Virus record (IMG/VR): IMGVR_UViG_3300022921_000002
Span: 62,001-126,000 of that record
Length of the DNA: 64,000 bases
Direction: 5' to 3' (one strand)
The notes beneath the pieces are model-generated. The model had not been told where the DNA came from, made no database searches, and saw only the letters and a list, made by a program, of their open reading frames with translations. How positions within the stretch are numbered: position 1 is the stretch's first letter; every line of letters begins with the position of its first letter. Both the position numbers and the translations under genes were made by a program. This document shows, piece after piece, positions 3,497 through 59,365 of the stretch.

Positions 3497-3507
3497 GTTT
3501 ATGTTCT

Positions 3508-41567: not shown

Positions 41568-41634
<67 letters not shown>

Positions 41635-41644
<10 letters not shown>

Positions 41645-41802: not shown

Positions 41803-41819
41803 AATATATCCTTTTTATT

Positions 41820-43921: not shown

Positions 43922-43929
43922 TATAAATA
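43922..43929 (+). promoter_or_regulatory. Late promoter TATAAATA heading the curli operon
   Basis: Exact match 21 nt upstream of 43950. Confidence 0.8.
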
Positions 43930-43949: not shown

Positions 43950-44228
43950 ATGGATTTTTTAACGCTTGTTGGTGATGTAGGTTTCCCTATTGCTGGTGCC
44001 CTAGCTGCCGGTGTATTTGTATTTATCACACTTAAGTTTATCCTTGCAAGCGTTACTGACACTGTAAATTCCCTCAAAAATATTATGACGGGTTTGGACA
44101 ACCGAGTTCAGACTATGAATAACGATTTAGTGAAAATTGATGCCCTTTTAAGTTATGCTCTAAATGTTAAACCAAACATTGACCGCATAGCTGCAAATGA
44201 AGGCAAGGATGATGCAAGGAGAGATTAA
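43950..44228 (+). CDS. Small membrane protein (paralogue of 44588..44968)
   Basis: GDVGFPIAGA...LDNRVQTMNNDL. Confidence 0.7.
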   Translation: MDFLTLVGDVGFPIAGALAAGVFVFITLKFILASVTDTVNSLKNIMTGLDNRVQTMNNDLVKIDALLSYALNVKPNIDRIAANEGKDDARRD

Positions 44229-44587: not shown

Positions 44588-44968
44588 ATGGAATTTGACA
44601 TTGCAGGAGCCATAAGTGAATATGGATTTCCTATAGTTGCGGCTTTTGGAATGGGCTATTTTATATTTTTTATATGGAAATGGGTTACGGAAGTAATTGA
44701 TCCGGTCCTAGGTGAAGCGATGTTTACTTTGATTAAATTAGTAGATCGTGTACGTATGCTTGATAATGATATGATTAGACTTAATAGCAAGTTATCTATG
44801 GTACTTGAATATAGGTCAAAACTAAATCCTAAGCGACAAGATGAGTTGCATAGGTTGGTTGCCGAATATCAGGCAGGTAGTAAAGCGTTTAATTCAACTG
44901 GGGTTGTAGATGAAGAAAATATTAACAATAGTGGCGGTGATGATGCCGGCACAGGTAATAGCAAGTGA
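44588..44968 (+). CDS. Small membrane protein (paralogue of 43950..44228)
   Basis: SEYGFPIVAA...LVDRVRMLDNDM. Confidence 0.7.
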   Translation: MEFDIAGAISEYGFPIVAAFGMGYFIFFIWKWVTEVIDPVLGEAMFTLIKLVDRVRMLDNDMIRLNSKLSMVLEYRSKLNPKRQDELHRLVAEYQAGSKAFNSTGVVDEENINNSGGDDAGTGNSK

Positions 44969-45371
44969 ATTAGTTTGGGGATTTAAATCTCCCGCTTTTC
45001 ATTATGGTAATGGATATTCAACTCACGTTTTGTCGGTTGAACAACTTTCTCACAACAGAAAACAAGATTATAAAGACGAGCAACAACGTATTGCCGATGA
45101 ACTTGAGCGAGAAGCAGAAAATACTACTTTAGCCAAATTCCTTCGCAACGTAGAGTCAAGAATTTACGCTACGTTATCCAAACAAATGGTTGATGCTATG
45201 TTTGCCGATTGTGGCGACAGTTGTTCCAACAGCGGTTCAACTGACCTTGAAGATAATACGATTGCTTGGTTAAGAGACCCGGTAACAGGTTCTATCACAT
45301 TAACGATTACCGAAGCAGATGGTAGTACTACTGAAATCACAATACCAGGTGCTGGGGAGTTTAATTTCTAA
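44910..45371 (+). CDS. csgF: Curli assembly protein CsgF-like
   Basis: Signal peptide then ELVWGFKSPAF...EQ (CsgF N-terminus); directly upstream of csgG. Confidence 0.75.
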   Translation: MKKILTIVAVMMPAQVIASELVWGFKSPAFHYGNGYSTHVLSVEQLSHNRKQDYKDEQQRIADELEREAENTTLAKFLRNVESRIYATLSKQMVDAMFADCGDSCSNSGSTDLEDNTIAWLRDPVTGSITLTITEADGSTTEITIPGAGEFNF

Positions 45372-46184
45372 ATGAGATTTTTACCCTTCATACTAATATT
45401 CTTTTTAAGTGCCTGCGCAACACCCGGAAGTTTGAAAGTTTTAGGTGACCTTGATAAATCTCCAACATTATCAGGAAGTCCTATTGATGATAGATTACTC
45501 GCCGTTCCTGAACTGTCAGGTCCAAAGATTACAATTGCAGTTTATGAATTTGCCGATAAGACAGGTCAAAGAAAGACGAGTTCCAACTCATCATTATCAA
45601 GTGCCGTAACTCAAGGTGCTGAGGTTTGGGTAATTAAAGCATTACAAGATGTGGGCAATCAAACATGGTTTGAGGTAGTTGAAAGAGTTGGCATTGATAA
45701 TCTAATTAAAGAAAGACAGCTTATTCGCCAAACGCGTGAAGTATATGAAAAAGAAAAAGAAAAAGGCCCGACACCTTTACAGCCAATGTTATTTGCCGGC
45801 TTATTACTTGAAGGTGGTGTTGTAGGTTATGACTCCGATACCGCGGCCGGTGGAGTAGGTGCAAGATTCCTAGGAGTCGGAGCCTCAACAGAATATAGAG
45901 TTGATACAGTAACAGTTGTTATGAGACTTGTGAGTGTTAATTCAGGAAAGGTGTTAATGAGTATCGCAACTGAGAAATCAATTGCAAGTTACAGATCTTC
46001 AACCGATGTATTTAAATTTATTGATTTAGGACAAGAAAATATTGAGGTTGAAAATGGGTATTCCGTAAATGAACCTGTGAACTATGCAGTAAGGGCTGCA
46101 ATAGAACAGGGTGTGATAGAATTGGTTAAAGACGGGGTCGATAAGGGATTATGGTCGTATAAAATAAAAGAGATAAGAGGATAG
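45372..46184 (+). CDS. csgG: Curli secretion channel CsgG
   Basis: Lipobox FLSAC, IAVYEFADKTGQRK, AVTQGA, WFEVVER, EGGVVGYD, EPVNYAVRAAIE. Confidence 0.93.
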   Translation: MRFLPFILIFFLSACATPGSLKVLGDLDKSPTLSGSPIDDRLLAVPELSGPKITIAVYEFADKTGQRKTSSNSSLSSAVTQGAEVWVIKALQDVGNQTWFEVVERVGIDNLIKERQLIRQTREVYEKEKEKGPTPLQPMLFAGLLLEGGVVGYDSDTAAGGVGARFLGVGASTEYRVDTVTVVMRLVSVNSGKVLMSIATEKSIASYRSSTDVFKFIDLGQENIEVENGYSVNEPVNYAVRAAIEQGVIELVKDGVDKGLWSYKIKEIRG

Positions 46185-46186
46185 AA

Positions 46187-46924
46187 ATGAAGCATTTCAT
46201 ATTTTTGATTATGATGATGTTTGGTTCTGCAGCCTATGCCAACGATATCTACATTACACAAAGCGGTGACAATTTAGATTTAGACATAACACAAGATGGG
46301 CAAGATAACGAATTCGGTGATAGTACCACTGATGCAACTTTGACGGGTGATACAATGACTTTTAATATCACCCAAACAGGTGATTTTAACAAGATTGACG
46401 TTATCATTGATGGTAACAACTACACAGGTACTTGGGCATTTACAGGTGACGATAACACTGTTGATATGACTTGTGATTCCGCATCAGGTTTGAATTGTGA
46501 AACAGTTCAGGTTGATGTTACTGTTATAGGTGATGATTCTGACTTTAAGATTTACATTGGTGAAACAGCAGATGCCGATAGTTTAGTTGCTGACTTTACT
46601 GTTACAGGTGATGGTAACGCATTTTATCTTGATGCTGATGGCACAAATCAGAATTTTGATGTTAATGTTAATTCAAGCGCAACATTACTTACAGCAGGTA
46701 CAGATCGTACACATTTAACTTACGATGTTAATGCTGATAGTGCCGGTAACTTGATTGCTATTGACAGCACAGGAGATGGTGATGTTAATGGGCATGAAGT
46801 AGATCTTACAGTTACTGGTGGCGGCGGAGATTTTATTATTGTTCAAAGCGGTATTTACGATAATCTCGTAAACGCAACTTTCAGTGGAGATTCAGCAAAT
46901 GTTCAAATTACACAATCTGATTAA
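46187..46924 (+). CDS. Curlin-repeat-like secreted protein
   Basis: Signal peptide; NDIYITQSGDNLDLDITQDGQDN and repeated xQ/TxGDxN units; very acidic. Confidence 0.7.
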   Translation: MKHFIFLIMMMFGSAAYANDIYITQSGDNLDLDITQDGQDNEFGDSTTDATLTGDTMTFNITQTGDFNKIDVIIDGNNYTGTWAFTGDDNTVDMTCDSASGLNCETVQVDVTVIGDDSDFKIYIGETADADSLVADFTVTGDGNAFYLDADGTNQNFDVNVNSSATLLTAGTDRTHLTYDVNADSAGNLIAIDSTGDGDVNGHEVDLTVTGGGGDFIIVQSGIYDNLVNATFSGDSANVQITQSD

Positions 46925-48069
46925 TGAAATTTCATACTATTGGCTTCATTGCCATTCTGCTGATACCGAGCTTATGCTTTGGCGCTGTAGATGAAGATGC
47001 GGGGGCAATCGGTGAATTTTCAGGATCAGGAGTCATTGAGCGTGGGAGAGATGTTATTGATGGTGGCCAAGGTGTTGGGGTGCAACCCATGGATACCGCC
47101 GTCACAGCAAAAGGCCGAATGCGAATCGACTTTATTGATGATACGAGAGTCGATATTACCGAACACGCAAGGTTAGTAATTGATGATTTCGTTTATGACC
47201 CAAATGCTGGGACTGGTAAGCTGGGATTACGTGCGACATTGGGAACAGTACGCTATGCGTCTGGAGCAATTGCAAAGAACAGCAGAAGAAACGTCAGCAT
47301 CAAAACACCGTCAGCAACGATAGGTGTACGTGGTACTGATTTCGTTATGGTGGTTGATGAAATAGGTGGCACGATGGTGACATTATTACCATCGTGTTCC
47401 ATCGACTCCCTCGGAAAAACCAATTGCGTGACCGGTGAAATTTCAGTTGAGTCTGACACCGGGTTTGTTATTATGAATAAAGCATTTCAGGCAACAATAG
47501 TAAAAAGCAGATGGACAAAACCAACTAAGCCATTATTATTGGCGCTTAATGAAAGTGACATAACAAACCTTTTGATTTTAAGAAAGAAAAAACCTTTATT
47601 TGAAGAAGATGGGCAACCATTAGAACAAATGACGGATTTCCTAGATATAGATTTCTTAAATTTTGACGGTTTGGATGTTGATATTTTATCCGATAGTATT
47701 AAAGACATATGGTTAACAGAGTTTGATTTAAGAGATAGTGATTATTATCTCGGTGAACTACTACACGACATGGTTGAACAATTAAACATTGCTTTAATGC
47801 GAAGACTTATGGGTGAATTAGATGCACAGAATGCCGAGTTCTTTAATTTCAGAGAAGAAGGTTATGATCCTGTAACAAGAATTACTTTAAACAGAGAAGA
47901 TCCTAGTTGGATTTTTGAAAGAGACGATAGTGGTTATTATCACCACCTAAGAATATATGTGGAGCAGCAATATGGATATACGATTAATATCCAACAACAG
48001 GACGAGTATGTTTGGGATTACCGTCTTGGCGTTGGTAATAATAATATTGACATCATCCAAATCAAATAG
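46924..48069 (+). CDS. FecR-domain protein
   Basis: Signal/TM segment, DDTRVDITEHARLVID, GTVRYASG, IKTPSATIGVRGTDF. Confidence 0.88.
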   Translation: MKFHTIGFIAILLIPSLCFGAVDEDAGAIGEFSGSGVIERGRDVIDGGQGVGVQPMDTAVTAKGRMRIDFIDDTRVDITEHARLVIDDFVYDPNAGTGKLGLRATLGTVRYASGAIAKNSRRNVSIKTPSATIGVRGTDFVMVVDEIGGTMVTLLPSCSIDSLGKTNCVTGEISVESDTGFVIMNKAFQATIVKSRWTKPTKPLLLALNESDITNLLILRKKKPLFEEDGQPLEQMTDFLDIDFLNFDGLDVDILSDSIKDIWLTEFDLRDSDYYLGELLHDMVEQLNIALMRRLMGELDAQNAEFFNFREEGYDPVTRITLNREDPSWIFERDDSGYYHHLRIYVEQQYGYTINIQQQDEYVWDYRLGVGNNNIDIIQIK

Positions 48070-48850
48070 TGGACCAAATGAAGTTTATATGTATCAAACA
48101 GGTGACGACTTTACGTTAACTATCACCCAAGATGGCAGTCAGAATTATATAACTGGTGTAAGTGGACAGACTAAAGGTATTGAAGGTGACAACAATACGG
48201 TTGATATGGTACAAATAGGACAGTATCATGGTATCGCAGGAATGTTAGATGGTGATAACAATAACATAGATTTTTATCAAGGTGGCGGTGGTGACAGCGG
48301 AATGATTACTGCAATGGTAACAGGTAATAATAATGACCTGGTGGTGTGGCAAGGTAAGCATCCTGATGGTACAACTGACTTGTCAGAAGGCGGTGACCAC
48401 ACTGCAACGGTTACCATTACTGGTGATTATAATGATATTAAGGCCGGACAAACTGATCAAGGACAAATTAATCAAACTTATGGTAGGCATGAATTAACCG
48501 CAGAAATTACCGGTGATAGCAATGATGTTGGAATGACACAAAAAGGAAATCAAAAGCATACATTGGACCTTGATATTTCTGGTGATGGTAATGATGTTAC
48601 AACTTATCAGCATGGTAATGGCGGACAAAAAACTGCAACCATTGAAGTTTCTGGCAACTATAACGTAATTGATGTAAACCAACGTGGAACAAATTCAGCG
48701 TCAGCAACCATTTCAGTAGAAAGCATATATGGTCCTGCCTATAATGTAACACTTAGCCAACAAACCGACACTTCTGCTAAATCATTTTCTTTAAGTGGTG
48801 TATGTAATGATCCAAATGGATGTGTCGTAAGTGTCGAGCAACACAACTAG
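47957..48850 (+). CDS. Second curlin-repeat-like secreted protein
   Basis: More than eight Q-x-G-x-x-N / GDxN repeats; true start probably 47975 or 48008. Confidence 0.7.
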   Translation: MWSSNMDIRLISNNRTSMFGITVLALVIIILTSSKSNSGPNEVYMYQTGDDFTLTITQDGSQNYITGVSGQTKGIEGDNNTVDMVQIGQYHGIAGMLDGDNNNIDFYQGGGGDSGMITAMVTGNNNDLVVWQGKHPDGTTDLSEGGDHTATVTITGDYNDIKAGQTDQGQINQTYGRHELTAEITGDSNDVGMTQKGNQKHTLDLDISGDGNDVTTYQHGNGGQKTATIEVSGNYNVIDVNQRGTNSASATISVESIYGPAYNVTLSQQTDTSAKSFSLSGVCNDPNGCVVSVEQHN

Positions 48851-48858
48851 GAGAAGTA

Positions 48859-48969
48859 ATGGATACAGTCGTCGCGTTTTTCATAGCAGGATTTTTTACA
48901 GCATTCGGTTGGTGGGCAGCAAACAAAATAACAACCCAAATTGATACACATATTGAGCAGGCTGAGTAA
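48859..48969 (+). CDS. 36-aa membrane peptide
   Basis: MDTVVAFFIAGFFTAFGWWAANKI...; SD AGGAG; TAATG coupling. Confidence 0.55.
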   Translation: MDTVVAFFIAGFFTAFGWWAANKITTQIDTHIEQAE

Positions 48970-49331
48970 TGGATTTAATTTTAAGTTTGGCTTTGTCAAC
49001 ACATTTGGGTCTTTCTCAAGATTATAATGAAATTCATCCTCATATAAGATTAACTAATGATAAATATATCGCAGGCGCATATTATAACAGCGTCGAAAAA
49101 TTGAGTGTATACTCAGGAATAAAATATAGTTATGGTGATATTGCAATAGAAGGAGGTGTGGCTACAGGCTATAGGCCACATCCAATAGCTCCTTATGGTA
49201 GGGTAACCTACGATTACGTGGATAATATAAGATTATTTGGGACTACGGCATTTGAATCCGACGGCTCTGCAGCTCGAGGAGGAATTGTATTAGGAATAGA
49301 ATTTATACTAAATCCACGGGAGAAGCAATGA
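48969..49331 (+). CDS. Small outer-membrane beta-barrel-like protein (PagP-like pattern)
   Basis: YNE.HP, AYYNS...S.Y.G, GVATGY...P motifs; alternating beta strands. Confidence 0.45.
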   Translation: MDLILSLALSTHLGLSQDYNEIHPHIRLTNDKYIAGAYYNSVEKLSVYSGIKYSYGDIAIEGGVATGYRPHPIAPYGRVTYDYVDNIRLFGTTAFESDGSAARGGIVLGIEFILNPREKQ

Positions 49332-51322
49332 AACATTTACTATTAACAACTGCATTAGTCATACCAAGCTGGGCTATTGCTGATACTTCGAGTTTACAAA
49401 CATCATCTCACGGTTTACTTGAGAACCAATGGGTTAAAGCTGGCATTAATAAAGACTCAGGCACATTTGGCTCTGGCGGAAGTACATCACCGGGCCTGTT
49501 ATTTGATCCTGAAGGTTCGGGTACATTTAATTCTAGTTATGATTATCTGACGCCTGGCTCGCCGTTTGACGGACAAGCACTAAAGGTAGATGGCACAAAT
49601 AAAGCAAATAATAATACAGGCTCAAAAACTATCGTTGACTCTGACGGTTTAACAGACGGCACAGACAGCATGACTTGGAGTGGTGATGTTGATGTTGATG
49701 GCGGTACATGGAATGTTGAAAATACATTTACATTAGAAGATAATAAACCATACATTGATGTTGAAACAAAAATTACCGCAGGTTCTGATGCTGATACTGT
49801 AGCATATGGTAAATTTATTGACCCAGACTCACAAGGTATGCCGGGAGATAGTTCATCAACAGATAACGTACTTGGGTATTCAGGTGTTCCTGATACAAAC
49901 ATTGCCTTTTCAGAAGCAACTGTTTCAAAGTATGCATTAGGTGTTTATTCAACGGATACAAACACTACTGCAGGCGTCAATGGTTGGTCATCAGAAGCAG
50001 ATGGATATAACGGAACAAGTTATACAGATGCCGAAGGCAATGCTGTCAATTACGGCAATTCAGATGATACTATTGGTATTAGTTGGTCTTGGACTGGTGT
50101 ATCAACAGGCGACATTCTTACAGCAAAATATGCTTATATCTTCGGCCCATCAGCGTTTGATGCACTTGATGATGCAGTAGATGGTGGAGCAGGCGGTGGT
50201 ACTCCTGGTGAATTACCTACAGGGTGGTCACTTGATGATGTTGGATCAGCAACAGATGCTGCCGAAAGCGGCGGAGCACCAACAGTTGTAAGTACCGCAA
50301 CCGAAACTATTACTTCAACATCAGAAGCAATAAGCACAACACTACCTGTTTTAACTGGTGCAATCACAACGCATGACTCATCTACAGCTGACGGTGTTCA
50401 AACTATTGACCGTGAAACTACTACGACTGTAACAACACCGATGGATGTAACAACCACAAGCTTTGTTAGAACTACTGATACTATGAGTGACGGCAGCGAA
50501 GTTGTTACAGACGGTACTCCAACATCAACTACAGTTGTTCGTAATGATGCTGTTGTAACTGTAACTGATCCAGGTTCATTCGTTGGACGTATGGATCAAG
50601 CATCGCAATTAATCGGATTAAATACTCATCGCAATTTAAATATAGCTGATGGCGTATCAGTAGGTCGCATTAACCATTCGATGGGTGATAACTACGAAGC
50701 AACATCAACGGTGGTTGGTCTTGGTCACACACTTGTAACCGACGATGCGTTAAGACTAAGCCTAGGTATTAATAGAATTGATACTGAAATGTCAGAAGGC
50801 GGCGATGGTGAAATAATAACAAACGCTGTGTCTGCTGAATTAGGAAAGGCAATAGAAGATAAAGACATTACCGTCGTAGGACGAGTAAACATGGCTAAAT
50901 CTGATATTGAATATTCAAGAACAATCGGTACTTTTTCTGCGGCAGGTGAAACATCAGCTTCTGACGTTTCTGCTGGGCTAACAATTGAAAAATCAACTGG
51001 TTCTGTTAGACCTTTCGGTGGATTAACTATCGGAAAATCAAGCACTGATGGATGGACTGAAACCGGAGATGTTCAAGCTGTTTTAACTCATGATGAAGCA
51101 GACGCTACATACAGATATGGTACAATAGGTTTCAATATTGATGAAGGACCAATTACCGCTACATTTAGTAAAAACATTGGCGACAATGATGCCACTAATA
51201 TAAGAATTGGTTTTGAACAAGAAATAAATGAATATGCTATTGTCGGTGTAGATTATAATAGAACTTTGGATGAAGATAATTCAAGCAATTATTTCTCAGC
51301 AGGTATCAAGATACGGTTTTAA
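49328..51322 (+). CDS. Autotransporter-like outer-membrane protein
   Basis: Signal peptide, acidic passenger, Thr-rich linker, C-terminal amphipathic strands ending SAGIKIRF. Confidence 0.65.
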   Translation: MKHLLLTTALVIPSWAIADTSSLQTSSHGLLENQWVKAGINKDSGTFGSGGSTSPGLLFDPEGSGTFNSSYDYLTPGSPFDGQALKVDGTNKANNNTGSKTIVDSDGLTDGTDSMTWSGDVDVDGGTWNVENTFTLEDNKPYIDVETKITAGSDADTVAYGKFIDPDSQGMPGDSSSTDNVLGYSGVPDTNIAFSEATVSKYALGVYSTDTNTTAGVNGWSSEADGYNGTSYTDAEGNAVNYGNSDDTIGISWSWTGVSTGDILTAKYAYIFGPSAFDALDDAVDGGAGGGTPGELPTGWSLDDVGSATDAAESGGAPTVVSTATETITSTSEAISTTLPVLTGAITTHDSSTADGVQTIDRETTTTVTTPMDVTTTSFVRTTDTMSDGSEVVTDGTPTSTTVVRNDAVVTVTDPGSFVGRMDQASQLIGLNTHRNLNIADGVSVGRINHSMGDNYEATSTVVGLGHTLVTDDALRLSLGINRIDTEMSEGGDGEIITNAVSAELGKAIEDKDITVVGRVNMAKSDIEYSRTIGTFSAAGETSASDVSAGLTIEKSTGSVRPFGGLTIGKSSTDGWTETGDVQAVLTHDEADATYRYGTIGFNIDEGPITATFSKNIGDNDATNIRIGFEQEINEYAIVGVDYNRTLDEDNSSNYFSAGIKIRF

Positions 51323-51758
51323 ATCTCGGTAACACCACACCGCATTGTTCCATAATCTTATAGAGTGTAAGTAATGCTTCGCACTCAAATTCATGGTAGG
51401 TTTTTTGATTTAAAACAATTGTATCTAATTCAGGAATGTCCATAGGGGCTATTACAATCTTATGAGGTAATAGCCCGCCGACATTAACAAGTCCTTCGAC
51501 AATAGGAGAGTTTGCTCTTGTTGTAATACCGATGATACAGTCAGCAAAAGTTCCGTATTCATATATCCATCTTTTATGCCAACCCTCATCACCACCCAAG
51601 GCGGTTAGGTGAATAGCATCAGGTGCAAAGCAATGTTTGCCAAGATGCCTTGTCATATCAGATGCAGCGTGTTGAGCAATAGCAAGGTTTCCGCCATTGC
51701 CTACAATAGCAATCTTTGGTGAATGAGATATTTTTTTAATAAGATTAAGATCTATCAA
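51306..51758 (-). CDS. SIS-domain phosphosugar isomerase (GmhA-like)
   Basis: IAIVGNGGNLAIAQHAASD, TALGGD, TYHEFE. Confidence 0.75.
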   Translation of the reverse strand: MIDLNLIKKISHSPKIAIVGNGGNLAIAQHAASDMTRHLGKHCFAPDAIHLTALGGDEGWHKRWIYEYGTFADCIIGITTRANSPIVEGLVNVGGLLPHKIVIAPMDIPELDTIVLNQKTYHEFECEALLTLYKIMEQCGVVLPRFKTVS

Positions 51759-52434
51759 GGTATTCCTCCACTAATTTTATATCGTCTGGTACATCAACCG
51801 CAGGTGTACGTTCATTAATCATATATGGTATAACATCAACCATTCCTATGAATGCTAATGTGTCTAGTCCTTTATGTGCATATACTAATTCTTGATCATA
51901 TTCTGGAAAATGCATAATTGTACCAAGATCATATGCATATAAGCCATTAATACCAACAAGATTAGGACTATCAATTAATTCACGGTCAGGTGTTCGTGTT
52001 AAGTAAACAATTTTCCCATTGCTGATAACAGCCTTAACTACGTTTACATTACTTCTTTCTTCATCGGTTAATGGATAACAACACTGAACCATTTCAGCAT
52101 TTGTTTCAAACATTTTACGAATGATTCCAGATATCATTTCAGGTGTAACACACGGTTCATCACTTTGTAAATTCACAATATAATCAGCATCAGTTTGAAT
52201 AACCGCCTCAGCAACTCGTGAAGTACAAGTGTTGTGAATCTTTTTTGTTTTAATAAGATTAGGCGCCCATATGCTGTCGTATTCGTCAGCAGCTACATAT
52301 ACTTTATTAATATCTGCGCAAGCGTTCGCGTTATCAATACAATGATTAAGAACAGATTTACCGTTTACTTCGGCAAATATTTTGCTTGGGAAACGAGTTG
52401 ATCCTGTTCTTGCTGGTATAATACAATCAATCAT
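51745..52434 (-). CDS. kdsB: CMP-Kdo synthetase KdsB-like cytidylyltransferase
   Basis: IIPARTGSTRFPSK, HNTCTSRV, IVNLQSDEP, VKAV, GLYAY, VDVPDDI. Confidence 0.8.
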   Translation of the reverse strand: MIDCIIPARTGSTRFPSKIFAEVNGKSVLNHCIDNANACADINKVYVAADEYDSIWAPNLIKTKKIHNTCTSRVAEAVIQTDADYIVNLQSDEPCVTPEMISGIIRKMFETNAEMVQCCYPLTDEERSNVNVVKAVISNGKIVYLTRTPDRELIDSPNLVGINGLYAYDLGTIMHFPEYDQELVYAHKGLDTLAFIGMVDVIPYMINERTPAVDVPDDIKLVEEYLDRS

Positions 52435-53269
52435 TTAATATATTCCTTATTTCCTCGGGTTTCAAATATGATATAGTTGAATACTCGATAGGTGCGGATA
52501 CAGCTTCATTTCTGAATTGTAATATTTTGTTTGGGCTGATACCCATAAATCCCCACGTGTCGGGTAAGTTATCATAATAGTGAGTATATTTGGTTGTCGG
52601 TGTTCCCGTCATTCCTGCGGTGTAATAAGTACCGCCGTCATAACTAAAATGGTGTGTGGTTGATAACAATATATCATAGATTTCTTCCATTGTCAAGGAG
52701 TAATGAATAAATTTTACACCATACCCAAACTCGTGAGCAATTTTAGTTATGTTCGGTAATATTGTTTTTTCTTTTTCCATTAATCCGCCGATCCGTCGCT
52801 TTGACATTAACGGTTCAGATTTATGAATTGAAACGAATTTACCTTTCTTATTCCATTGTTTTTTAAACGGCCATAATTGATTTACCGTCCAAGGTGTTGC
52901 AACTGTCTGCTTTTGTTCGTACCGATATATGCTTACAATCATACCATTCTTAGGAGGTAGCATATTATTAAGAAACCATTTCATAACATCATATGAGGTT
53001 TCGGCATTACTAGGTTTACGTTTAAATGGATTGATAAATTGTTCAGGCCACATAATAGAAACACGATATGGGCCTTGTGCATAGTCTTCATCTGACATTA
53101 ATTGTGCTTTAAAGAAAACATCACTTAATAAACACATAATAGTGCAGTGAGCATGGGCTGTATCAGCACAAAAACGTACTATGTGGGATGATGTTGGCAG
53201 TGAAATGCTTTTATTATTTTCACAACCTATATAAATAGTTTCAATTAGATTTGCCATGATATAATCCAT
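52427..53269 (-). CDS. Possible GT9 (heptosyltransferase)-like glycosyltransferase
   Basis: LTMEEIYDILLSTTHHFSYDGGTYYTAGMTGTPT resembles the GT9 D-S-G-x-x-H-x-A...P motif. Confidence 0.5.
   Translation of the reverse strand: MDYIMANLIETIYIGCENNKSISLPTSSHIVRFCADTAHAHCTIMCLLSDVFFKAQLMSDEDYAQGPYRVSIMWPEQFINPFKRKPSNAETSYDVMKWFLNNMLPPKNGMIVSIYRYEQKQTVATPWTVNQLWPFKKQWNKKGKFVSIHKSEPLMSKRRIGGLMEKEKTILPNITKIAHEFGYGVKFIHYSLTMEEIYDILLSTTHHFSYDGGTYYTAGMTGTPTTKYTHYYDNLPDTWGFMGISPNKILQFRNEAVSAPIEYSTISYLKPEEIRNILND
53230..53237 (+). promoter_or_regulatory. Late promoter TATAAATA (Cys-rich peptide/cyclase/lipase operon)
   Basis: Exact match inside the 5' end of the opposite-strand gene. Confidence 0.65.
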
Positions 53270-53280: not shown

Positions 53281-53288
53281 TATTTATA
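53281..53288 (-). promoter_or_regulatory. Late promoter TATAAATA (GT9/KdsB/SIS cassette)
   Basis: tatttata 12 nt upstream of 53269. Confidence 0.7.
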
Positions 53289-53300: not shown

Positions 53301-53423
53301 ATGATAGGTCAAGAGAGATTTTGTAAAAAGTGTGGTCACCGCTGCCACTGTTATGCATCAGACTGTAAAGAATGTGTCAATGATGTTTGCACAAGCTGTG
53401 ATTGTAAGAAAGATAAAGAATGA
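53301..53423 (+). CDS. Cys-rich metallothionein-like peptide (40 aa, 9 Cys, 2 His)
   Basis: MIGQERFCKKCGHRCHCYASDCKECVNDVCTSCDCKKDKE; SD AAGGAG; ATGA overlap with the cyclase. Confidence 0.7.
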   Translation: MIGQERFCKKCGHRCHCYASDCKECVNDVCTSCDCKKDKE

Positions 53424-55462
53424 AAAATATTTTATTATCTCCTATATGGAGCATATTATTGTTAGGGTTACTTGCTTGGCTGCATACTATTAATCCTTCA
53501 TTCATTGAAAGTTTAAGATTACGGTATTTTGACCAGCTTATTGTAAATCAAGAGGTTGTCCCAAATAACATTTATTCAGTAAACATTGATGAAGATGCAA
53601 TAACCGAATATGGACAATGGCCATTTCCTAGACAAGTATACTCAGAATTTATTATAGATCTGTACAATAGAGGTGCAGGTCTTGTTGTTTTAAATATTCT
53701 TATGTCTGAACCTGATAGATCCGGCGGAGATGAAGACCTTGCTATAACTATGCAGCAAGTACCAATAATTTTAACCATGCTTGGAGCTGAGGAGAACAAA
53801 AATGAAGCGATTAATCCAGGAGCCTCTATTATTAATAGCGATTATATTTCTCTCATTCCAAGTGTACCTGGGATTATCGCTAACATCAATGAGCTTGAAA
53901 CTAATGCAGTGGGGTCAGGAATCATCAACACATTCCCAGAGATCGACGGGGTTACCCGCAGAGCACCGTTGGTATTCGAGTCCGGGGGGAACCTCTTCCC
54001 TAATGTCACCCTTGAGGTATTGCGAGTCCTTGCCGGAGACCCATCCTTCCAAATCAAGTTGTCGCCGCTCGGGGTTGATAAATTAAGAATACCACAATTT
54101 GGAATGATACCAACAAATGAGGTTGGCGAGGTATGGATAGATTGGTCTCAAGGTTATCAATCAGAATCAATAATGAATTTGCCAGATGATTTAGGAGGTG
54201 CTGTAGTATTTGTTGGACCAACAGCTGCAGGTACTATTCAACCGATTTCAACTGCGGTTGGTGGAGTATATCCACAAGAAATACAAGCAGCAATGCTTGG
54301 TACTGTATTTAATGAGTCAAACATCACACGTCACGCCGATGCAAAAGCATGGGGTGAACTGGCTGCTCTAATTGTAGCAGGGCTATTAATAATTGGTTTA
54401 TCCTATTGGACTTTTATAGGCATCGGCGCATTCGTATTAACGATTGGCGGCTTTATAGGAGGGTCTATCTATGTATTCCAAAGTTCAAATTTACTTATTG
54501 ACGGCATCACTATTTCTGTTATGCTGTTCCTTGTTGGTAGTTTACGATATATTGTAAAATTCGTAGACGAGTTTTTACAGAAACAAGCAATCAAAAAACA
54601 ATTCGCGGGTTACGCTTCACCAACGGTTGTTAAGTTATTACAAGAAAATCCGTCGTTAGTTAAGGATGGGCAAAAGAAAGACGTATCAATAGTATTCAGT
54701 GACCTTCGCGGTTTTACTCCTTTAGGAGAAAGCTTTGGCGATGATGTTAAAGGCTTAACGGAGATTATGAATGGTTATATGGATGCAATAACCGAACCAG
54801 TATTAGATGCCAATGGCATGATTATTAAGTATATCGGCGATGCTTCAATGCATATTCACAACGCACCGATAGATGATCCTGACCACCCACGAACCGCGGT
54901 GCAAGTGGCTTTCAAAATGCTGAAAGCAGTGGAGAAATTTAATGTGGCACTTCAAAGAAGTAACCGGCCGCCAGTGGGCATGGGTGCTGGTATTAATTCT
55001 GGCCTGGGTTACATTGGGGAGATGGGTAGTAGTAAGCGGCACAGCTACGACATACTTGGGGATGCTGTATCAACAGCAGCAAGAATTGAGTCTAAATGTA
55101 AAGAATATGGAATGGTACTCCTCATTGGAGAAGAAACGCAACGCCACACAGCTGATGAATTCTTTTACCTCAAGATCGACGACTTGGCAGTCAAAGGTAA
55201 ATCGGTAGGAATTGGAATTTGGACAGCACTTGATGATGTAAAACAACCATGGTATGCAGCACAGAAAAAACACCAAGAAATGTTTGCTGCGTATCAAGCA
55301 CAAGATTTTGATAAAGCTATTGAACTATGTGATATATTACATGGCCACTTTGATAATAAAATGGACGGATATTATGATATGTGGAAAGAAAGATGTGAAT
55401 ATATGAAAACACAAGACCTTCCAGAAGATTGGAACGGCGTATTTATTGCGACCACAAAATGA
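53420..55462 (+). CDS. CHASE2-domain class III adenylate cyclase
   Basis: CHASE2 (GQWPFPR, DGVTRR, YPQEIQA), three TM helices, cyclase motifs FSDLRGFT, KYIGDA, GINSG, GDAVSTAARIES. Confidence 0.92.
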   Translation: MKNILLSPIWSILLLGLLAWLHTINPSFIESLRLRYFDQLIVNQEVVPNNIYSVNIDEDAITEYGQWPFPRQVYSEFIIDLYNRGAGLVVLNILMSEPDRSGGDEDLAITMQQVPIILTMLGAEENKNEAINPGASIINSDYISLIPSVPGIIANINELETNAVGSGIINTFPEIDGVTRRAPLVFESGGNLFPNVTLEVLRVLAGDPSFQIKLSPLGVDKLRIPQFGMIPTNEVGEVWIDWSQGYQSESIMNLPDDLGGAVVFVGPTAAGTIQPISTAVGGVYPQEIQAAMLGTVFNESNITRHADAKAWGELAALIVAGLLIIGLSYWTFIGIGAFVLTIGGFIGGSIYVFQSSNLLIDGITISVMLFLVGSLRYIVKFVDEFLQKQAIKKQFAGYASPTVVKLLQENPSLVKDGQKKDVSIVFSDLRGFTPLGESFGDDVKGLTEIMNGYMDAITEPVLDANGMIIKYIGDASMHIHNAPIDDPDHPRTAVQVAFKMLKAVEKFNVALQRSNRPPVGMGAGINSGLGYIGEMGSSKRHSYDILGDAVSTAARIESKCKEYGMVLLIGEETQRHTADEFFYLKIDDLAVKGKSVGIGIWTALDDVKQPWYAAQKKHQEMFAAYQAQDFDKAIELCDILHGHFDNKMDGYYDMWKERCEYMKTQDLPEDWNGVFIATTK

Positions 55463-55764
55463 TTAGAACTTTATTTGAAATGTTCTTTAAAAATTATATT
55501 GATGAACAAATAGACAAACGGTTCACGGAGAATATGATTGAAAGATACTGGGCTCAAAGACAGAATGAAACATCAAGACGACTTCAACAAGCAAGAGATC
55601 GCTACAAGATTGATTATCCGCCTTCCCATGAGGCCGAGCAAGATATGTCCGAGCCCAAAGTATTGTCCAGTGGTGACTTACGATGGGACGACGCCAAATC
55701 CCGAGTACAAACAAAAACCACTACATCTTCGTTAAAAGATAAACTAAAGGGGATTAACAAATGA
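55429..55764 (+). CDS. Hypothetical protein
   Basis: ORF in the operon; true start probably MIRTLF. Confidence 0.5.
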   Translation: MERRIYCDHKMIRTLFEMFFKNYIDEQIDKRFTENMIERYWAQRQNETSRRLQQARDRYKIDYPPSHEAEQDMSEPKVLSSGDLRWDDAKSRVQTKTTTSSLKDKLKGINK

Positions 55765-56501
55765 TAGAAAAATGCGCAACTATGGCTCAGTGTGCTCAAA
55801 TAGCATATATGGACGGTAAAGAAGCAAAAGCTGAATATAAAAAGTTAGGTTATACACAACATAAATTTATTGAAAAGGATGGTGCTCAGGTACACCTTAT
55901 TCAGAATAAGAACGAAATTGTTTTATGTTTCCGTGGTACAGAGCCTGGTGAATTTTCTGATATTAAAGCAGATCTAAATGCTATGCCCGACAAAGCAAAC
56001 AACGGATCAGGTCTTGTCCATAACGGTTTTCAAACAGAAGTTGATAAAGTATGGGTTGCAATTGAAGCAGCATTGGCAAAGGCAAAACCTAAAGACCTAT
56101 TCATATGCGGACATTCATTAGGTGGTGCAATGGCAACAATTGCAACATCTCGTTTGGCTGATGGTCCTTGGAATCCTGTGGCATTATATACATATGGATC
56201 ACCGAGAGTTGGTACTCGTAAATTCGTCAAGAGTTTTAAAAATGTTACTCACTATCGCCATGTCAACAATAATGATTTGGTAACAACTGTACCGTTTGCA
56301 CTTATTGGCTATAGACATCATTGCCCACCACGTTATATTAATTACTACGGTAATATTAGAAAAATGTCGAAGTGGCAAAGAATTAAAGACAAGTGGCGCG
56401 GCCGTTGGAGAGCATTGAAAAAAGGTATGCCTTTTGATGGTGCATATGACCACGGTATGAACCATTACTGCAAATACACGGAGCAAAATAATGATAGATA
56501 G
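55761..56501 (+). CDS. Class 3 lipase
   Basis: FRGT, VHNGF, GHSLGGA, YGSPRVG, DLVTTVP, DHGM. Confidence 0.9.
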   Translation: MIEKCATMAQCAQIAYMDGKEAKAEYKKLGYTQHKFIEKDGAQVHLIQNKNEIVLCFRGTEPGEFSDIKADLNAMPDKANNGSGLVHNGFQTEVDKVWVAIEAALAKAKPKDLFICGHSLGGAMATIATSRLADGPWNPVALYTYGSPRVGTRKFVKSFKNVTHYRHVNNNDLVTTVPFALIGYRHHCPPRYINYYGNIRKMSKWQRIKDKWRGRWRALKKGMPFDGAYDHGMNHYCKYTEQNNDR

Positions 56502-56793
56502 AATGCTAGAAGACACGTTATGGATCTACACCGCAATTGGCGGATCCATAATTGGCGCAGTTGTACTTGCATATTTGAGTACAACACGCATTGGACTATG
56601 GGGCTATGCTAAATTTGATTTGATGATTGATTACTTAGTTGAGCGCTGGGGTTTAACCTGGCTTGAACAACCTGAAGACGCATGGCGAAAGAAGTATCCA
56701 AAAATCACTCAAAAGATTGATGATATGGAGCGCCGGCTAAATGCCGTTGAAGCAAAAGCTGGTGTTAAAATCCTAGGAGGAAAAAAGAAATGA
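56491..56793 (+). CDS. Membrane protein with coiled-coil tail
   Basis: N-terminal TM, WRKKYPKIT...ERRL. Confidence 0.6.
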   Translation: MIDRMLEDTLWIYTAIGGSIIGAVVLAYLSTTRIGLWGYAKFDLMIDYLVERWGLTWLEQPEDAWRKKYPKITQKIDDMERRLNAVEAKAGVKILGGKKK

Positions 56794-56949: not shown

Positions 56950-57705
56950 TTAAGCTTTCCGCCAATGTTCAAATGAAGGCAGTGTTCTACTATATTCGGC
57001 GACATTTGGTTTTCTTACAATCATAACATCTCCTGCCACACAAAACCTACTTAGTTTTAAATCAGTTTTTGTTTTGAAACTTTGGAGGCCAGGTCCATCG
57101 TCACCTTCCTGTGCAACAATATCATGGTTAAGGTTTGATGGAAATACTAGTAGAACACCGTCCTTTACTGGGAATTGCCATGTTCTTGCATTTGCATAAG
57201 TCCAATTCCCACCCACGTGTTCGCCAAAGAATTTTGAATAGGGCTCATTAGGATGAGCATCACGTGGATCATAGAATCTAATATCACGGTGCCTTTGAAT
57301 ATTTACGTGTGGATAATACACCCATGAGATATGATTCTCAGCATGGTTATGGATATTTATGGATGCTTTATCGGTTATATTAAAGAATGCTTTTGTTATA
57401 AACAAATCAATCTTCATTCGGTTCACACCGATTGTCTCAAGGTACAGGTTTAAACAGTTTGGTAATACTACATCAAACCATTCCGCTAATGCAGGATCAT
57501 TGTGTACTTTCTCATAACCGATAAAGTCATGAGATACACCACTTTCCTTTGAATGTCTAAGATAAGCGTCAAACCACATATCTTTTTCTTTTTGAGTTAC
57601 AGGTTTTCTAACTTCTGTAATTGTTGTTGGAAAAATAAAGTGATTTTGAAATTCACCTTCTTGAGTTGTCGGAAACTTTTCCTCATATCTAAATTGATTT
57701 GCCAT
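56950..57705 (-). CDS. 2OG-Fe(II) oxygenase (TIGR02466-like)
   Basis: HNHAENHISWVYY, LLVFPSNLNH. Confidence 0.75.
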   Translation of the reverse strand: MANQFRYEEKFPTTQEGEFQNHFIFPTTITEVRKPVTQKEKDMWFDAYLRHSKESGVSHDFIGYEKVHNDPALAEWFDVVLPNCLNLYLETIGVNRMKIDLFITKAFFNITDKASINIHNHAENHISWVYYPHVNIQRHRDIRFYDPRDAHPNEPYSKFFGEHVGGNWTYANARTWQFPVKDGVLLVFPSNLNHDIVAQEGDDGPGLQSFKTKTDLKLSRFCVAGDVMIVRKPNVAEYSRTLPSFEHWRKA

Positions 57706-58573
57706 GCTTTCCCATTTCTAACTTATACTGATCGTGGCACATATCACCAAGCGATTTTGTCAGGTTACATAATTTTGATGGATTATCAACTATAGATTTA
57801 ACAGCATCACCGGCACGACGGCCGACAATTTTTCTATTCATTGATTTACCGGTAATTTTTTCCATAGTATCTAAGACTTCGTGGACAGTCCATCCTTGAT
57901 TACTTCCGAGGCATTCGTATGGAGTATTGGATGGTCCAGATATAGCAGCGTTGAGTAAAGAATTACAGAGATCGTTAACGTGAATGTAATCACGTACACA
58001 AGTCCCATCCCGTGTTTCATAATCATCTCCATATACTTCTACGTGTTGCCGTATGCCTGCAGCAACTTCCGCTCCAATTCTAATGAGGTGAGAACTATCC
58101 CCAAGCTGACGATTAATACCATCACTCCCACTAACATTAAAGAAACGAAAAATAGTGTACCCATCAGCTTTCTCCTTTATAATATCTTCAGCACCAACTT
58201 TTGAGCGAGCATATGGTGATGCCATTTCAAAAGCCGATGATGTAGATGCGAATATGAAATTATCAGTACGTAATTTTTGAACCGCATTGAGCGTACCCAT
58301 TGTATTGATACGATAATATGCTGATGGTTCTTTTAATGATTGTGGAACAATACTACGGCCTGCAAGGTGAACTACTGCATCACCCCAACCCATAAGCCAA
58401 TGATCCATAATATCCTGTACCCAAAACTTGTCACAGTATTTAGAAACATCATTGCTTTCGCCATGGAAATTGTTATCAAACCCATGGACTTCATATCCAT
58501 GTTCTTTTGCCAACCGACAAAAATGTGATCCGATATAACCGGACGCACCTGTCACTAATAACTTCATAACCAT
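57689..58573 (-). CDS. galE: UDP-glucose 4-epimerase
   Basis: TGASGYIGSH, ASTS, YARSK, RFFNV, DGTCVRDYIHV. Confidence 0.9.
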   Translation of the reverse strand: MVMKLLVTGASGYIGSHFCRLAKEHGYEVHGFDNNFHGESNDVSKYCDKFWVQDIMDHWLMGWGDAVVHLAGRSIVPQSLKEPSAYYRINTMGTLNAVQKLRTDNFIFASTSSAFEMASPYARSKVGAEDIIKEKADGYTIFRFFNVSGSDGINRQLGDSSHLIRIGAEVAAGIRQHVEVYGDDYETRDGTCVRDYIHVNDLCNSLLNAAISGPSNTPYECLGSNQGWTVHEVLDTMEKITGKSMNRKIVGRRAGDAVKSIVDNPSKLCNLTKSLGDMCHDQYKLEMGKHGKSI

Positions 58574-59287: not shown

Positions 59288-59365
59288 TGGTGATCTCTGT
59301 AGGACTCGAACCTACGACCTAGTGCTTAGAAGGCACTTGCTCTAATCCTGCTGAGCTAAGAGACC
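59288..59365 (-). tRNA. tRNA-Arg(TCT)
   Basis: Cloverleaf: GGTCTCT/AGAGATC acceptor, AGTGC-CTTCTAA-GCACT anticodon arm, TTCGAGT T-loop, CCA. Confidence 0.97.

What the first reader, a model, noticed from the sequence alone, without database searches (positions are those of the whole stretch)
53420..55462. Phage-encoded trans-envelope signalling: FecR protein plus CHASE2 adenylate cyclase
Seen: an intact 680-aa receptor cyclase (periplasmic CHASE2, three TM helices, class III domain with both metal Asp residues and the ATP-specifying Lys in KYIGD). The transition-state Asn is replaced by Ser (GDAVSTAAR). A FecR-domain gene sits inside the curli operon 5 kb upstream on the same strand. Known: FecR-domain and CHASE2-cyclase genes are frequent bacterial neighbours. 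Inference: a circuit that senses an outer-membrane or periplasmic event (curli assembly, superinfection) and makes a cyclic nucleotide late in infection, to time lysis, reprogram CRP-family regulons or interfere with cyclic-nucleotide immunity.
Basis: partly seen in the sequence, partly recalled or inferred. Interest (0 to 1): 0.7.

Follow-up and report, generated by a model that had tools for sequence, protein, structure and literature searches.

The report
Phage curli-module CHASE2 adenylate cyclase
A large T4-like marine phage carries an intact membrane sensor enzyme that probably makes cyclic AMP and always travels with phage curli-secretion genes and a secreted FecR-domain protein; this gene set was already described in SAR11 and OM43 phages, so this is a new example rather than a new kind of system.

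Summary
ORF 53420-55462 (+) is an intact 680-aa protein with one N-terminal TM helix, a complete periplasmic CHASE2 domain, three more TM helices and a class III cyclase domain. Both metal Asp residues, the Lys/Asp adenine-type pair and the transition-state Arg are present. The transition-state Asn is Ser551.

The genome is a 221-kb T4-like virus. CsgF, CsgG, two curlin-repeat proteins and a FecR-domain protein lie 5-8 kb upstream on the same strand.

Co-occurrence is very strong. All 40 related viral loci with enough flank carry csgG, FecR and the cyclase. Phages Melnitz and HTVC008M carry them contiguously.

This module, including FecR and the cyclase, was published by Wittmers et al. 2022 (PMC9599517), so it is a new member of a known kind.

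The "FecR-type trans-envelope signalling" reading is only partly supported. The FecR protein is secreted and has no anti-sigma domain or membrane anchor. The phage has no ECF sigma factor, no STN transducer and no cNMP-binding protein.

New details:
- Ser551 plus Asp544 mark one largely viral clade under purifying selection.
- An autotransporter and a PagP-like gene sit inside the module.
- A reversed three-gene sugar cassette splits the cyclase from the operon.
- The cyclase has a T4-late-promoter-like box and a translationally coupled 40-aa Cys-rich peptide.

Function remains untested.

The parts
43922..43929 (+). TATAAATA box (T4 late-promoter consensus) 21 nt before the first gene of the + strand block that holds the curli module
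   Evidence: The count in the window is not above chance (9 found, 8.8 expected), so the case rests on position only. A gp55-like late sigma factor is present in the genome.
43950..44228 (+). Small protein of phrog_18771, first of two paralogues
   Evidence: PHROG hit E 3.5e-30. A homologue-built HMM also matches it.
44588..44968 (+). Small TM plus helical protein of phrog_18771, second paralogue. It is probably what Wittmers et al. call 'HK'. No histidine-kinase domain was detected.
   Evidence: One TM at residues 12-30. No Pfam or NCBIfam hit. PHROG hit E 5.8e-28. Its homologue sits either before csgF or downstream of the cyclase on the minus strand in related loci.
44910..45371 (+). CsgF homologue with a signal peptide
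   Evidence: Pfam CsgF E 1.5e-11; N-terminal hydrophobic segment.
45372..46184 (+). CsgG curli pore lipoprotein (lipobox LSAC)
   Evidence: Pfam CsgG E 5.7e-50; sequence.
46187..46924 (+). Secreted curlin-repeat-like protein 1
   Evidence: Weak Pfam Curlin_rpt hit (E 0.0014, below cut-off). Homologous to the Melnitz 'curlin associated repeat protein'. Signal peptide visible.
46924..48069 (+). Secreted FecR-domain protein. Layout: signal peptide, FecR-fold beta domain at about 27-193, disordered linker, helix, C-terminal beta domain.
   Evidence: Pfam FecR E 1.1e-8. phrog_37870 E 1.5e-90. AF2 model pLDDT 75. The N-domain matches PupR 6ovk and BDI_1681 4m0n. The only hydrophobic segment is residues 1-24. 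Cys158 and Cys168 are nearly invariant. dN/dS about 0.11-0.12.
47957..48850 (+). Curlin-repeat protein 2. The true start is probably the internal Met before the hydrophobic segment.
   Evidence: Pfam Curlin_rpt E 1.7e-12. Weak CsgA NCBIfam hit. Hydrophobic segment at residues 14-37.
48969..49331 (+). Small PagP-like, probably outer-membrane, protein. It recurs between curlin 2 and the cyclase.
   Evidence: phrog_3600 E 1.2e-8. Homologues found in 24 distinct loci.
49328..51322 (+). Autotransporter-like protein. Layout: signal peptide, beta-sandwich passenger, Thr/Ser-rich linker, helix plus 12-strand C-terminal barrel ending in Phe.
   Evidence: AF2 model pLDDT 71.5. Foldseek matches NalP, EstA, AaaA, EspP and BrkA translocators, with TM-score by target 0.53-0.69. 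Recurs in the same position in 23 distinct loci.
51306..53269 (-). Three-gene cassette on the opposite strand (SIS/GmhA-like 150 aa, CTP_transf_3 cytidylyltransferase 229 aa, unknown 280 aa). It separates the cyclase from the operon.
   Evidence: Pfam and NCBIfam hits. Present only in the near-identical loci L002-L005.
53230..53237 (+). TATAAATA box 64 nt upstream of the small ORF and cyclase. A second box on the minus strand (53281-53288) faces the 280-aa gene.
53301..53423 (+). 40-aa Cys/His-rich peptide gene with an AAGGAG-type ribosome site. Its stop overlaps the cyclase start (ATGA).
   Evidence: Sequence read. tblastn finds conserved copies (CxxCGHxCHC...CxxCxNDVCxxCxC) in more than 25 loci, either directly upstream of the cyclase or 1.5-3.5 kb downstream on the minus strand.
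53420..55462 (+). Receptor-type class III nucleotidyl cyclase. Layout: TM1, periplasmic CHASE2, TM2-4, cyclase domain (417-595), conserved ~80-aa C-terminal tail.
   Evidence: phrog_35576 E 7e-171. dN/dS 0.125 against L004.
55761..56793 (+). Class 3 lipase/esterase (246 aa) and a 100-aa TM protein. Both often follow the cyclase in related loci.
   Evidence: Pfam Lipase_3 E 1.9e-23. phrog_21992. Co-occurrence in L004, L006, L007, L010, L012, L015, L017 and L019.

Best explanation
The gene encodes a functional inner-membrane receptor cyclase. It is the last member of the envelope module that T4-like marine phages of the pelagimyophage/Melnitz group carry. That module runs: two small membrane proteins, CsgF, CsgG, curlin-repeat protein, secreted FecR-domain protein, second curlin-repeat protein, optionally a PagP-like protein and an autotransporter, then the CHASE2 cyclase.

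Shown: the domain architecture, the catalytic residue set (Asp428, Asp474, Lys470, Asp544, Arg555, with Ser551 at the Asn position), purifying selection, and invariable linkage of csgG, FecR and the cyclase in related phages.

Inferred mechanism:
1. The phage expresses the module from T4-type late promoters.
2. The secreted FecR-domain protein acts in the periplasm as a co-sensor or ligand-presenting partner of the CHASE2 domain. This follows from the conserved FecR-domain/CHASE2 gene pairs of bacteria. It does not act as an anti-sigma factor.
3. The cyclase dimer converts ATP to cAMP in the cytoplasm in response to an envelope cue linked to the phage-built curli and surface apparatus.
4. Because the phage has no cNMP-binding protein, the signal must act on host cAMP receptors.

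In this phage a reversed sugar-nucleotide cassette has cut the cyclase off from the operon. The cyclase is probably served by its own late-type promoter and is translationally coupled to a conserved 40-aa Cys-rich peptide.
For: Architecture and residues. Ser551 and Asp544 are present in 60 of 61 phage sequences of 49-100% identity, and the other catalytic residues in all 61. Among 141 representatives, the Ser/Asp combination occurs in only six: the window, P0121-P0123, P0127 and P0166. P0127 sits in a phage-like contig with a curli cluster, and P0166 lies on a 3.9-kb contig next to a FecR-domain gene. On the 82-row tree the 12 Ser-type rows form one side of a branch with support 99. dN/dS is 0.125 for the cyclase and about 0.11-0.12 for FecR. 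Linkage. Bacterial FecR-domain/CHASE2 neighbourhood: and PMC9239204, PMC5192318, PMC5498481. The module including FecR and the cyclase is published, with reported metatranscriptome expression of the viral curli components and FecR (PMC9599517). The FecR fold with no anti-sigma or TM parts. No cNMP-binding domain in the phage. Late sigma factor and TATAAATA boxes before the module and before the cyclase.
Against: No activity, product or ligand has been measured for any member of this family. The transition-state Asn is missing. From memory of Yan et al. 1997 (not checkable here; one search found nothing), the same Asn-to-Ser change lowers kcat of mammalian cyclase 30-100-fold. A physical FecR-CHASE2 contact is not shown: the complex prediction gave no answer. 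TATAAATA is not more frequent in the window than chance, so the promoter assignment rests on position only. The metatranscriptome contigs cover both strands evenly and cannot be told apart from carried-over DNA. The host and its cAMP receptors are unknown.
Confidence: 0.6

Rival explanations
1. The protein is a catalytically crippled pseudo-cyclase. Loss of the transition-state Asn abolishes useful turnover, and the protein serves as a membrane receptor or scaffold for the curli apparatus, or as a nucleotide-binding sensor.
For: Ser replaces the conserved Asn. 133 of 141 representatives of CHASE2 cyclases keep Asn.
Against: The other five catalytic residues are invariant or nearly so across 61 phage sequences down to 35% identity, which is unexpected if catalysis were lost. 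Ser itself is fixed and co-varies with Asp544 in one clade. dN/dS is 0.06-0.125. Ser can still donate a hydrogen bond.
Confidence: 0.15
2. The Ser551/Asp544 clade makes a product other than cAMP (cGMP, a pyrimidine cyclic nucleotide or a linear product), so its targets are not CRP-type cAMP receptors.
For: The clade changed two active-site positions together relative to its Asn/Ser(Thr) relatives. It also has GDASMH where relatives have GDCIMA.
Against: Lys470 plus Asp544 is the canonical adenine-specifying pair of class III adenylyl cyclases (established knowledge; alignment). No residue typical of guanylyl cyclases (Glu/Cys) is present.
Confidence: 0.1
3. This is classical FecR-type cell-surface signalling: the FecR protein relays an outer-membrane transducer signal across the inner membrane to a sigma factor, and the cyclase is a bystander.
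For: A Pfam FecR domain, and a fold match to the PupR C-terminal signalling domain.
Against: The protein has no N-terminal anti-sigma domain and no membrane anchor beyond a signal-peptide-like segment. There is no STN-domain transducer above cut-off. The only sigma-like gene is a gp55-type late sigma factor.
Confidence: 0.03
4. The cyclase is an independent auxiliary gene that merely sits in the same hypervariable island as the curli genes and has no functional link to them or to FecR.
For: In this window it is separated from the operon by 4.5 kb that includes three genes on the other strand. It seems to have its own promoter. Bacterial relatives are almost never next to csgG, with 1 case among about 65 loci.
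Against: Linkage is 40 of 40 in csgG-centred viral loci. The genes are contiguous in Melnitz, HTVC008M and L086. FecR-domain genes are adjacent to bacterial CHASE2 cyclases independently of curli (PMC9239204).
Confidence: 0.1

Closest known systems
Pelagiphage T8SS (curli) module with FecR and adenylate cyclase (Wittmers et al. 2022, PMC9599517). Cultured examples: Pelagibacter phage HTVC008M gp014-019 and Methylophilales phage Melnitz gp99-104.
   Same: It has the same gene set and order: small membrane proteins, CsgF, CsgG, curlin, FecR, curlin, cyclase. The cyclase is 49% identical to Melnitz gp104 and 35% to HTVC008M gp019. It has the same T4-like phage background.
   Different: The genome is 221 kb rather than about 140-147 kb. 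The cyclase is split from the operon by a PagP-like gene, an autotransporter and a reversed three-gene sugar cassette. The main text of the paper does not mention CHASE2, the Asn-to-Ser variant or the Cys-rich peptide. HTVC008M keeps the canonical Asn and has Ser at the substrate position.
Bacterial CHASE2 receptor adenylate cyclases with neighbouring FecR-domain genes. Examples: Sinorhizobium meliloti CyaD1/CyaD2/CyaK with Clr (PMC5498481), and the Campylobacterota cluster of CHASE2 cyclase, phosphodiesterase, FecR-domain protein and TPR protein (PMC9239204).
   Same: The architecture is the same: TM, CHASE2, three TM helices, class III domain. A secreted FecR-domain protein is encoded nearby in about two thirds of the bacterial loci examined.
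   Different: Identity is at most about 31%. The bacterial proteins have Asn at the transition-state position and Ser or Thr at the substrate position. They have no curli genes beside them, apart from 1 locus of about 65. A phosphodiesterase and a CRP-like receptor are encoded by the same genome, whereas the phage has no cNMP-binding protein.
Burkholderia 'BiofilmReg' operon: secreted LysM/FecR protein plus CHASE2 histidine kinase (PMC5192318).
   Same: A secreted FecR-domain protein is paired with a CHASE2 sensor, and the system is linked to biofilm and surface behaviour.
   Different: The output is a histidine kinase and response regulator, not a cyclase, and it is a bacterial chromosomal system.
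FecR/PupR anti-sigma regulators of cell-surface signalling (PDB 6ovk).
   Same: The periplasmic FecR-fold beta domain matches (Foldseek probability 1.0, TM-score by target about 0.5).
   Different: There is no cytoplasmic anti-sigma domain, no TM anchor, and no ECF sigma factor or TonB-dependent transducer partner.
Solved class III cyclases, for example Spirulina CyaC (1wc0) and Pseudomonas CyaB (3r5g).
   Same: The catalytic domain aligns over residues 417-606 with E 1e-17 to 1e-19. The metal Asp pair, Lys and Arg are conserved.
   Different: Ser replaces Asn1146 of CyaC, and Asp sits where CyaC has Thr1139.

Membership tests
Class III nucleotidyl cyclase (PF00211) | Profile match above the curated threshold | tested here: met
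   61.5 bits against a cut-off of 21.9, residues 417-595. 44 PDB cyclases matched.
Class III nucleotidyl cyclase (PF00211) | Two metal-binding Asp residues | tested here: met
   Asp428 and Asp474, invariant in 61 phage sequences and 141 representatives.
Class III nucleotidyl cyclase (PF00211) | Substrate-specifying pair (Lys plus Asp/Thr/Ser for ATP) | tested here: met
   Lys470 and Asp544.
Class III nucleotidyl cyclase (PF00211) | Transition-state Asn and Arg | tested here: not met
   Arg555 is present, but the Asn position is Ser551. Ser is conserved in 60 of 61 phage homologues, and 133 of 141 representatives have Asn.
Class III nucleotidyl cyclase (PF00211) | Cyclase activity and product | not testable with these tools
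   Needs an enzyme assay or cya complementation.
CHASE2 sensor proteins (PF05226) | Full-length CHASE2 profile match flanked by one N-terminal and three C-terminal TM helices | tested here: met
   111.8 bits, profile positions 6-254 of 257. Hydropathy segments at 3-24 and 308-382.
FecR-type anti-sigma / cell-surface signalling regulators | Periplasmic FecR domain | tested here: met
   Pfam FecR 35.9 bits against a cut-off of 24. Fold match to PupR 6ovk and 4m0n.
FecR-type anti-sigma / cell-surface signalling regulators | N-terminal cytoplasmic anti-sigma domain and a single TM anchor | tested here: not met
   The protein starts with a signal-peptide-like segment (residues 1-24). The FecR domain begins at about residue 27, and there is no other hydrophobic segment.
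FecR-type anti-sigma / cell-surface signalling regulators | Cognate ECF sigma factor and TonB-dependent transducer with an STN domain | tested here: not met
   The only Sigma70_r2 hit in the 221-kb genome is a gp55-type late sigma factor. The STN hit is 14.9 bits, below the cut-off, inside a 1585-aa ORF. Host genes could not be examined.
Phage T8SS/curli module (Wittmers et al. 2022) | CsgF, CsgG, curlin-repeat protein(s), FecR and an adenylate cyclase on one strand in a phage genome | tested here: met
   Homology to the Melnitz and HTVC008M modules.
Phage T8SS/curli module (Wittmers et al. 2022) | Histidine kinase gene(s) preceding csgF | tested here: inconclusive
   Two small phrog_18771 proteins precede csgF. 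No Pfam or NCBIfam kinase domain was detected in the one scanned.

The most novel reading that the evidence does not exclude
The largely viral Lys/Asp/Ser/Arg clade may be a functionally distinct cyclase with altered regulation or product. Together with the secreted FecR-domain protein, the CsgG/CsgF pore, curlin fibres, a phage autotransporter and a coupled Cys-rich peptide, it would form a phage-installed envelope sensory organ. That organ would report a surface event (superinfection, cell-cell contact or fibre assembly) to the cytoplasm late in infection, for example to set the time of lysis. This would be a cyclic-nucleotide counterpart of T4 lysis inhibition.
Probability: 0.12. Interest if true: 0.75.

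Novelty: new member of a known kind. Interest (0 to 1): 0.35.

Why it matters
Phage curli/T8SS modules are widespread in ocean viromes (PMC9599517), and their function is unknown. The cyclase is the only component with a predictable cytoplasmic output, which makes it the most tractable route to finding out what the module does. This window adds several useful details:
- The cyclase is a CHASE2 receptor paired with a secreted FecR-domain protein, and that FecR protein is not of the anti-sigma type.
- A largely viral, selectively maintained active-site variant (Asn to Ser, with Asp at the substrate position) separates the Melnitz-type clade from the HTVC008M type.
- The module can also carry an autotransporter and a PagP-like protein.

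These points sharpen the experiments to run, but they do not change the category of the finding.

Tried and rejected
- Complex prediction of CHASE2 (residues 23-312) with FecR (21-381). The single-sequence version scored 0.00, and the tool says it gives no answer, so I do not use it as evidence.
- Metatranscriptome evidence. Three salt-marsh RNA libraries hold the locus at depth 30-78, but as long contigs that cross genes on both strands. Transcription cannot be separated from DNA carry-over.
- Generic sigma-70 promoter and terminator scans over 43.5-57 kb gave counts no different from shuffles.
- TATAAATA count enrichment: none. Only the positions are suggestive.
- Literature check of the Asn-to-Ser mutant of mammalian cyclase (N1025S). 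Nothing was found in the searchable library, so the statement rests on memory.
- Host inference from MAGs that contain near-identical phage contigs (L091-L099). These are phage contigs binned into MAGs. The cNMP-binding search in three such MAGs says nothing reliable about the host.
- NCBIfam gave no named family for the cyclase.
Full report
**1. What is at the coordinates**

The ORF at 53420-55462 on the + strand is open for 680 codons.
- Pfam finds a complete CHASE2 domain (residues 20-323, E 5e-32, profile positions 6-254 of 257) and a class III cyclase domain (Guanylate_cyc, residues 417-595, E 1e-16).
- Hydropathy shows one N-terminal hydrophobic segment (3-24) and a block at 308-382 that resolves into three helices.
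- The predicted topology is therefore: N-terminus in, CHASE2 in the periplasm, cyclase domain in the cytoplasm.
- About 80 residues after the cyclase domain are also conserved among relatives.

**2. Catalytic residues**

phmmer alignments to solved cyclases (Spirulina CyaC 1wc0/1wc1 and the phytochrome-cyclase fusion 6fht) assign the residues:

| Role | Residue | Motif or equivalent |
|---|---|---|
| Metal ligand | Asp428 | FSDLRGFT |
| Metal ligand | Asp474 | KYIGD |
| Substrate-specifying | Lys470 | – |
| Substrate-specifying | Asp544 | aligned to Thr1139 of CyaC |
| Transition state (Asn position) | Ser551 | aligned to Asn1146 of CyaC |
| Transition state | Arg555 | – |

**3. Surroundings and origin**

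The same strand carries the following genes upstream:

| Coordinates | Gene |
|---|---|
| 43950-44228 and 44588-44968 | two small proteins of phrog_18771 |
| 44910-45371 | CsgF |
| 45372-46184 | CsgG (lipobox) |
| 46187-46924 | curlin-repeat-like protein |
| 46924-48069 | FecR-domain protein |
| 47957-48850 | second curlin-repeat protein |

The window is bases 62001-126000 of a 221,447-bp virus record that CheckV estimates as complete. The genome has a T4-type clamp loader, topoisomerase II, baseplate tail-tube cap and a gp55-type late sigma factor. 'Phage-encoded' is therefore right.

**4. Already known**

- Methylophilales phage Melnitz has CsgF, CsgG, curlin, FecR, curlin and an 'adenylate/guanylate cyclase' as contiguous genes gp99-104.
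- Pelagibacter phage HTVC008M has the same set as gp014-019.
- The cyclases are 49% and 35% identical to the window's protein.
- Zaragoza-Solas et al. 2020 described the curli genes but not the cyclase. The Melnitz paper does not discuss the cyclase either.
- Wittmers et al. 2022 (PMC9599517) explicitly report FecR, a 'histidine kinase' and an adenylate cyclase as parts of the pelagiphage T8SS cluster. They give phylogenies pointing to an alphaproteobacterial origin and report metatranscriptome expression of the viral curli components and FecR.
- The main text of that paper does not mention CHASE2 or the active-site variant.

**5.

- The cyclase has 254 relatives in IMG/VR, and 80 loci were fetched. 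Every locus with enough upstream flank has CsgF, CsgG and FecR 2-8 kb upstream on the same strand. The one exception is L080, where the cluster lies downstream on the other strand.
- Starting instead from CsgG, all 40 loci with at least 9 kb downstream carry both FecR and the cyclase. The cyclase begins 2.0-7.2 kb after csgG, and the window has the longest gap.
- The refutation condition is clearly not met.

**6. What separates the cyclase from the operon here**

- Two + strand genes recur at this position in many relatives.
  - A 120-aa PagP-like protein (phrog_3600, E 1e-8).
  - A 664-aa protein whose AF2 model (pLDDT 71.5) has a beta-sandwich passenger, a linker, and a helix plus 12-strand barrel. 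It matches the NalP, EstA, AaaA, EspP and BrkA translocators, so it is a phage autotransporter.
- Three minus-strand genes follow: a SIS/GmhA-like gene, a CTP_transf_3 cytidylyltransferase and an unknown gene. They occur only in near-identical loci (L002-L005), so they are a recent insertion.
- The divergent gap at 53.2-53.3 kb holds one TATAAATA box on each strand.
- A 40-aa Cys/His-rich ORF (53301-53423) has a good ribosome site, and its stop overlaps the cyclase ATG.
  - The peptide is conserved in more than 25 loci, always within a few kb of the cyclase.
- TATAAATA is not over-represented in the window (9 found, 8.8 expected). Five of the nine boxes lie 12-64 nt upstream of a start codon on the same strand, including one 21 nt before the first gene of the curli-bearing block. 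With a gp55-like sigma factor present, late transcription is a reasonable inference, but it is not shown.

**7. The FecR protein is not a FecR-type transducer**

- It begins with a signal-peptide-like segment and has no other hydrophobic stretch.
- The AF2 model (pLDDT 75) shows a beta domain at 27-193, a disordered linker, a long helix and a second beta domain.
- The first beta domain matches the PupR C-terminal signalling domain (6ovk) and BDI_1681 (4m0n).
- Two nearly invariant Cys residues fit an extracytoplasmic location.
- There is no anti-sigma domain. The genome has no ECF sigma factor and no STN-domain transducer above cut-off.

Secreted FecR-domain proteins are nonetheless conserved genomic partners of CHASE2 sensors.
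- About 43 of about 65 bacterial relatives of this cyclase, mostly Alphaproteobacteria at 31% identity or less, have a FecR-HMM hit within 8 kb, often directly adjacent. Only one has csgG nearby.
- The literature reports the same pairing in Campylobacterota (PMC9239204), Burkholderia (PMC5192318) and Sinorhizobium (PMC5498481).

The best reading is a periplasmic co-sensor for CHASE2. A complex prediction gave no answer either way.

**8. The Asn-to-Ser change**

- Ser551 and Asp544 are present in 60 of 61 phage sequences spanning 49-100% identity. The other catalytic residues are invariant.
- HTVC008M has the canonical Asn and has Ser at the substrate position.
- Among the 141 full-length sequences of the best 150 representatives from a search of 1.84 billion proteins, 133 have Asn and 135 have Ser or Thr at the substrate position.
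- Only six combine Ser551 with Asp544: the window, P0121-P0123, P0127 and P0166.
  - P0127 lies in a phage-like contig carrying Thy1, then CsgF, CsgG, an unnamed 239-aa gene, FecR and the cyclase.
  - P0166 lies on a 3.9-kb contig next to a FecR-domain gene. Its viral origin is not established.
- On a FastTree of 82 sequences, the 12 Ser-type rows form one side of a branch (support 99). They are sister to Asn-type sequences from phage-like contigs.
- dN/dS is 0.125 against a 92%-identical homologue, and lower but with saturated dS against more distant ones.
- The variant therefore arose once and is maintained by selection, which argues for function rather than decay. Whether it changes rate, regulation or product cannot be decided here.

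**9. Output**

The phage has no cNMP-binding domain, so any cyclic nucleotide must act through host proteins. The host is unknown. MAG contigs carrying near-identical genes are binned phage contigs. RNA libraries from salt marsh contain the locus, but they cannot prove transcription.

**10. Verdict**

The system is a new member of a published kind. It adds several incremental features: the CHASE2 assignment, the largely viral active-site variant, the autotransporter and PagP-like additions, the split operon with its own late-type promoter, and the coupled Cys-rich peptide.

Noticed in passing
window 53301-53423 (+): A 40-aa Cys/His-rich peptide gene (pattern CxxCGHxCHC...CxxCxNDVCxxCxC) is translationally coupled to the cyclase through an ATGA overlap. 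It is conserved in more than 25 related viral loci, either directly upstream of the cyclase or 1.5-3.5 kb downstream on the opposite strand. It has no PHROG hit.
   Followed up: partly
window 49328-51322 (+): A phage-encoded autotransporter-like protein with a signal peptide, a beta-sandwich passenger, a Thr/Ser-rich linker and a helix plus 12-strand barrel. It matches the NalP, EstA and AaaA translocators and recurs inside the curli-cyclase module of many relatives.
   Followed up: yes
window 48969-49331 (+): A 120-aa protein with a PagP-like PHROG hit (phrog_3600, E 1e-8). It usually lies just before the autotransporter gene in related loci and may be a small outer-membrane barrel.
   Followed up: partly
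window 51306-53269 (-): A reversed three-gene cassette (SIS/GmhA-like gene, CMP-sugar-type cytidylyltransferase, unknown 280-aa gene) is inserted between the module and the cyclase. It is present only in near-identical relatives. Together with the 2OG-Fe(II) oxygenase and NAD-dependent epimerase genes at 56950-58573 (-), it looks like a surface-sugar modification set.
   Followed up: partly
window 55761-56793 (+): A class 3 lipase/esterase and a 100-aa TM protein follow the cyclase here and in several relatives. The TM protein has a weak, sub-threshold XhlA-like hit. A role in envelope breakdown or lysis is possible but untested.
   Followed up: no
window 43950-44228 and 44588-44968 (+): Two paralogous small membrane/helical proteins (phrog_18771) precede csgF. 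In many related loci one copy lies downstream of the cyclase on the minus strand. They are probably the 'histidine kinases' of Wittmers et al., but no kinase domain is detectable with Pfam or NCBIfam.
   Followed up: partly
window 3489-3515, 24816, 39776, 41004-41015, 43922, 53230, 53281: All nine TATAAATA boxes in the window lie at or near gene boundaries, and two pairs form divergent arrangements. This is consistent with T4-type late promoters, although the total count equals chance expectation.
   Followed up: partly
window 35111-37415 (-) and 17476-18699 (-): There are two adjacent radical-SAM proteins and a DNA methyltransferase. tRNA genes are also present: Pro and Trp at 41568-41893 and Arg at 59288-59365.
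   Followed up: no
window 59365-59841 (-): A 158-aa protein with glycine-zipper outer-membrane-protein motifs (Gly-zipper_Omp, and weakly TraT-like). It is another envelope-targeted phage protein close to the module.
   Followed up: no
L086 10348-10749 (related phage-like contig): In a distant relative, the gene two positions downstream of the cyclase has a weak Pfam Tad3 hit. It is absent from the window.
   Followed up: no
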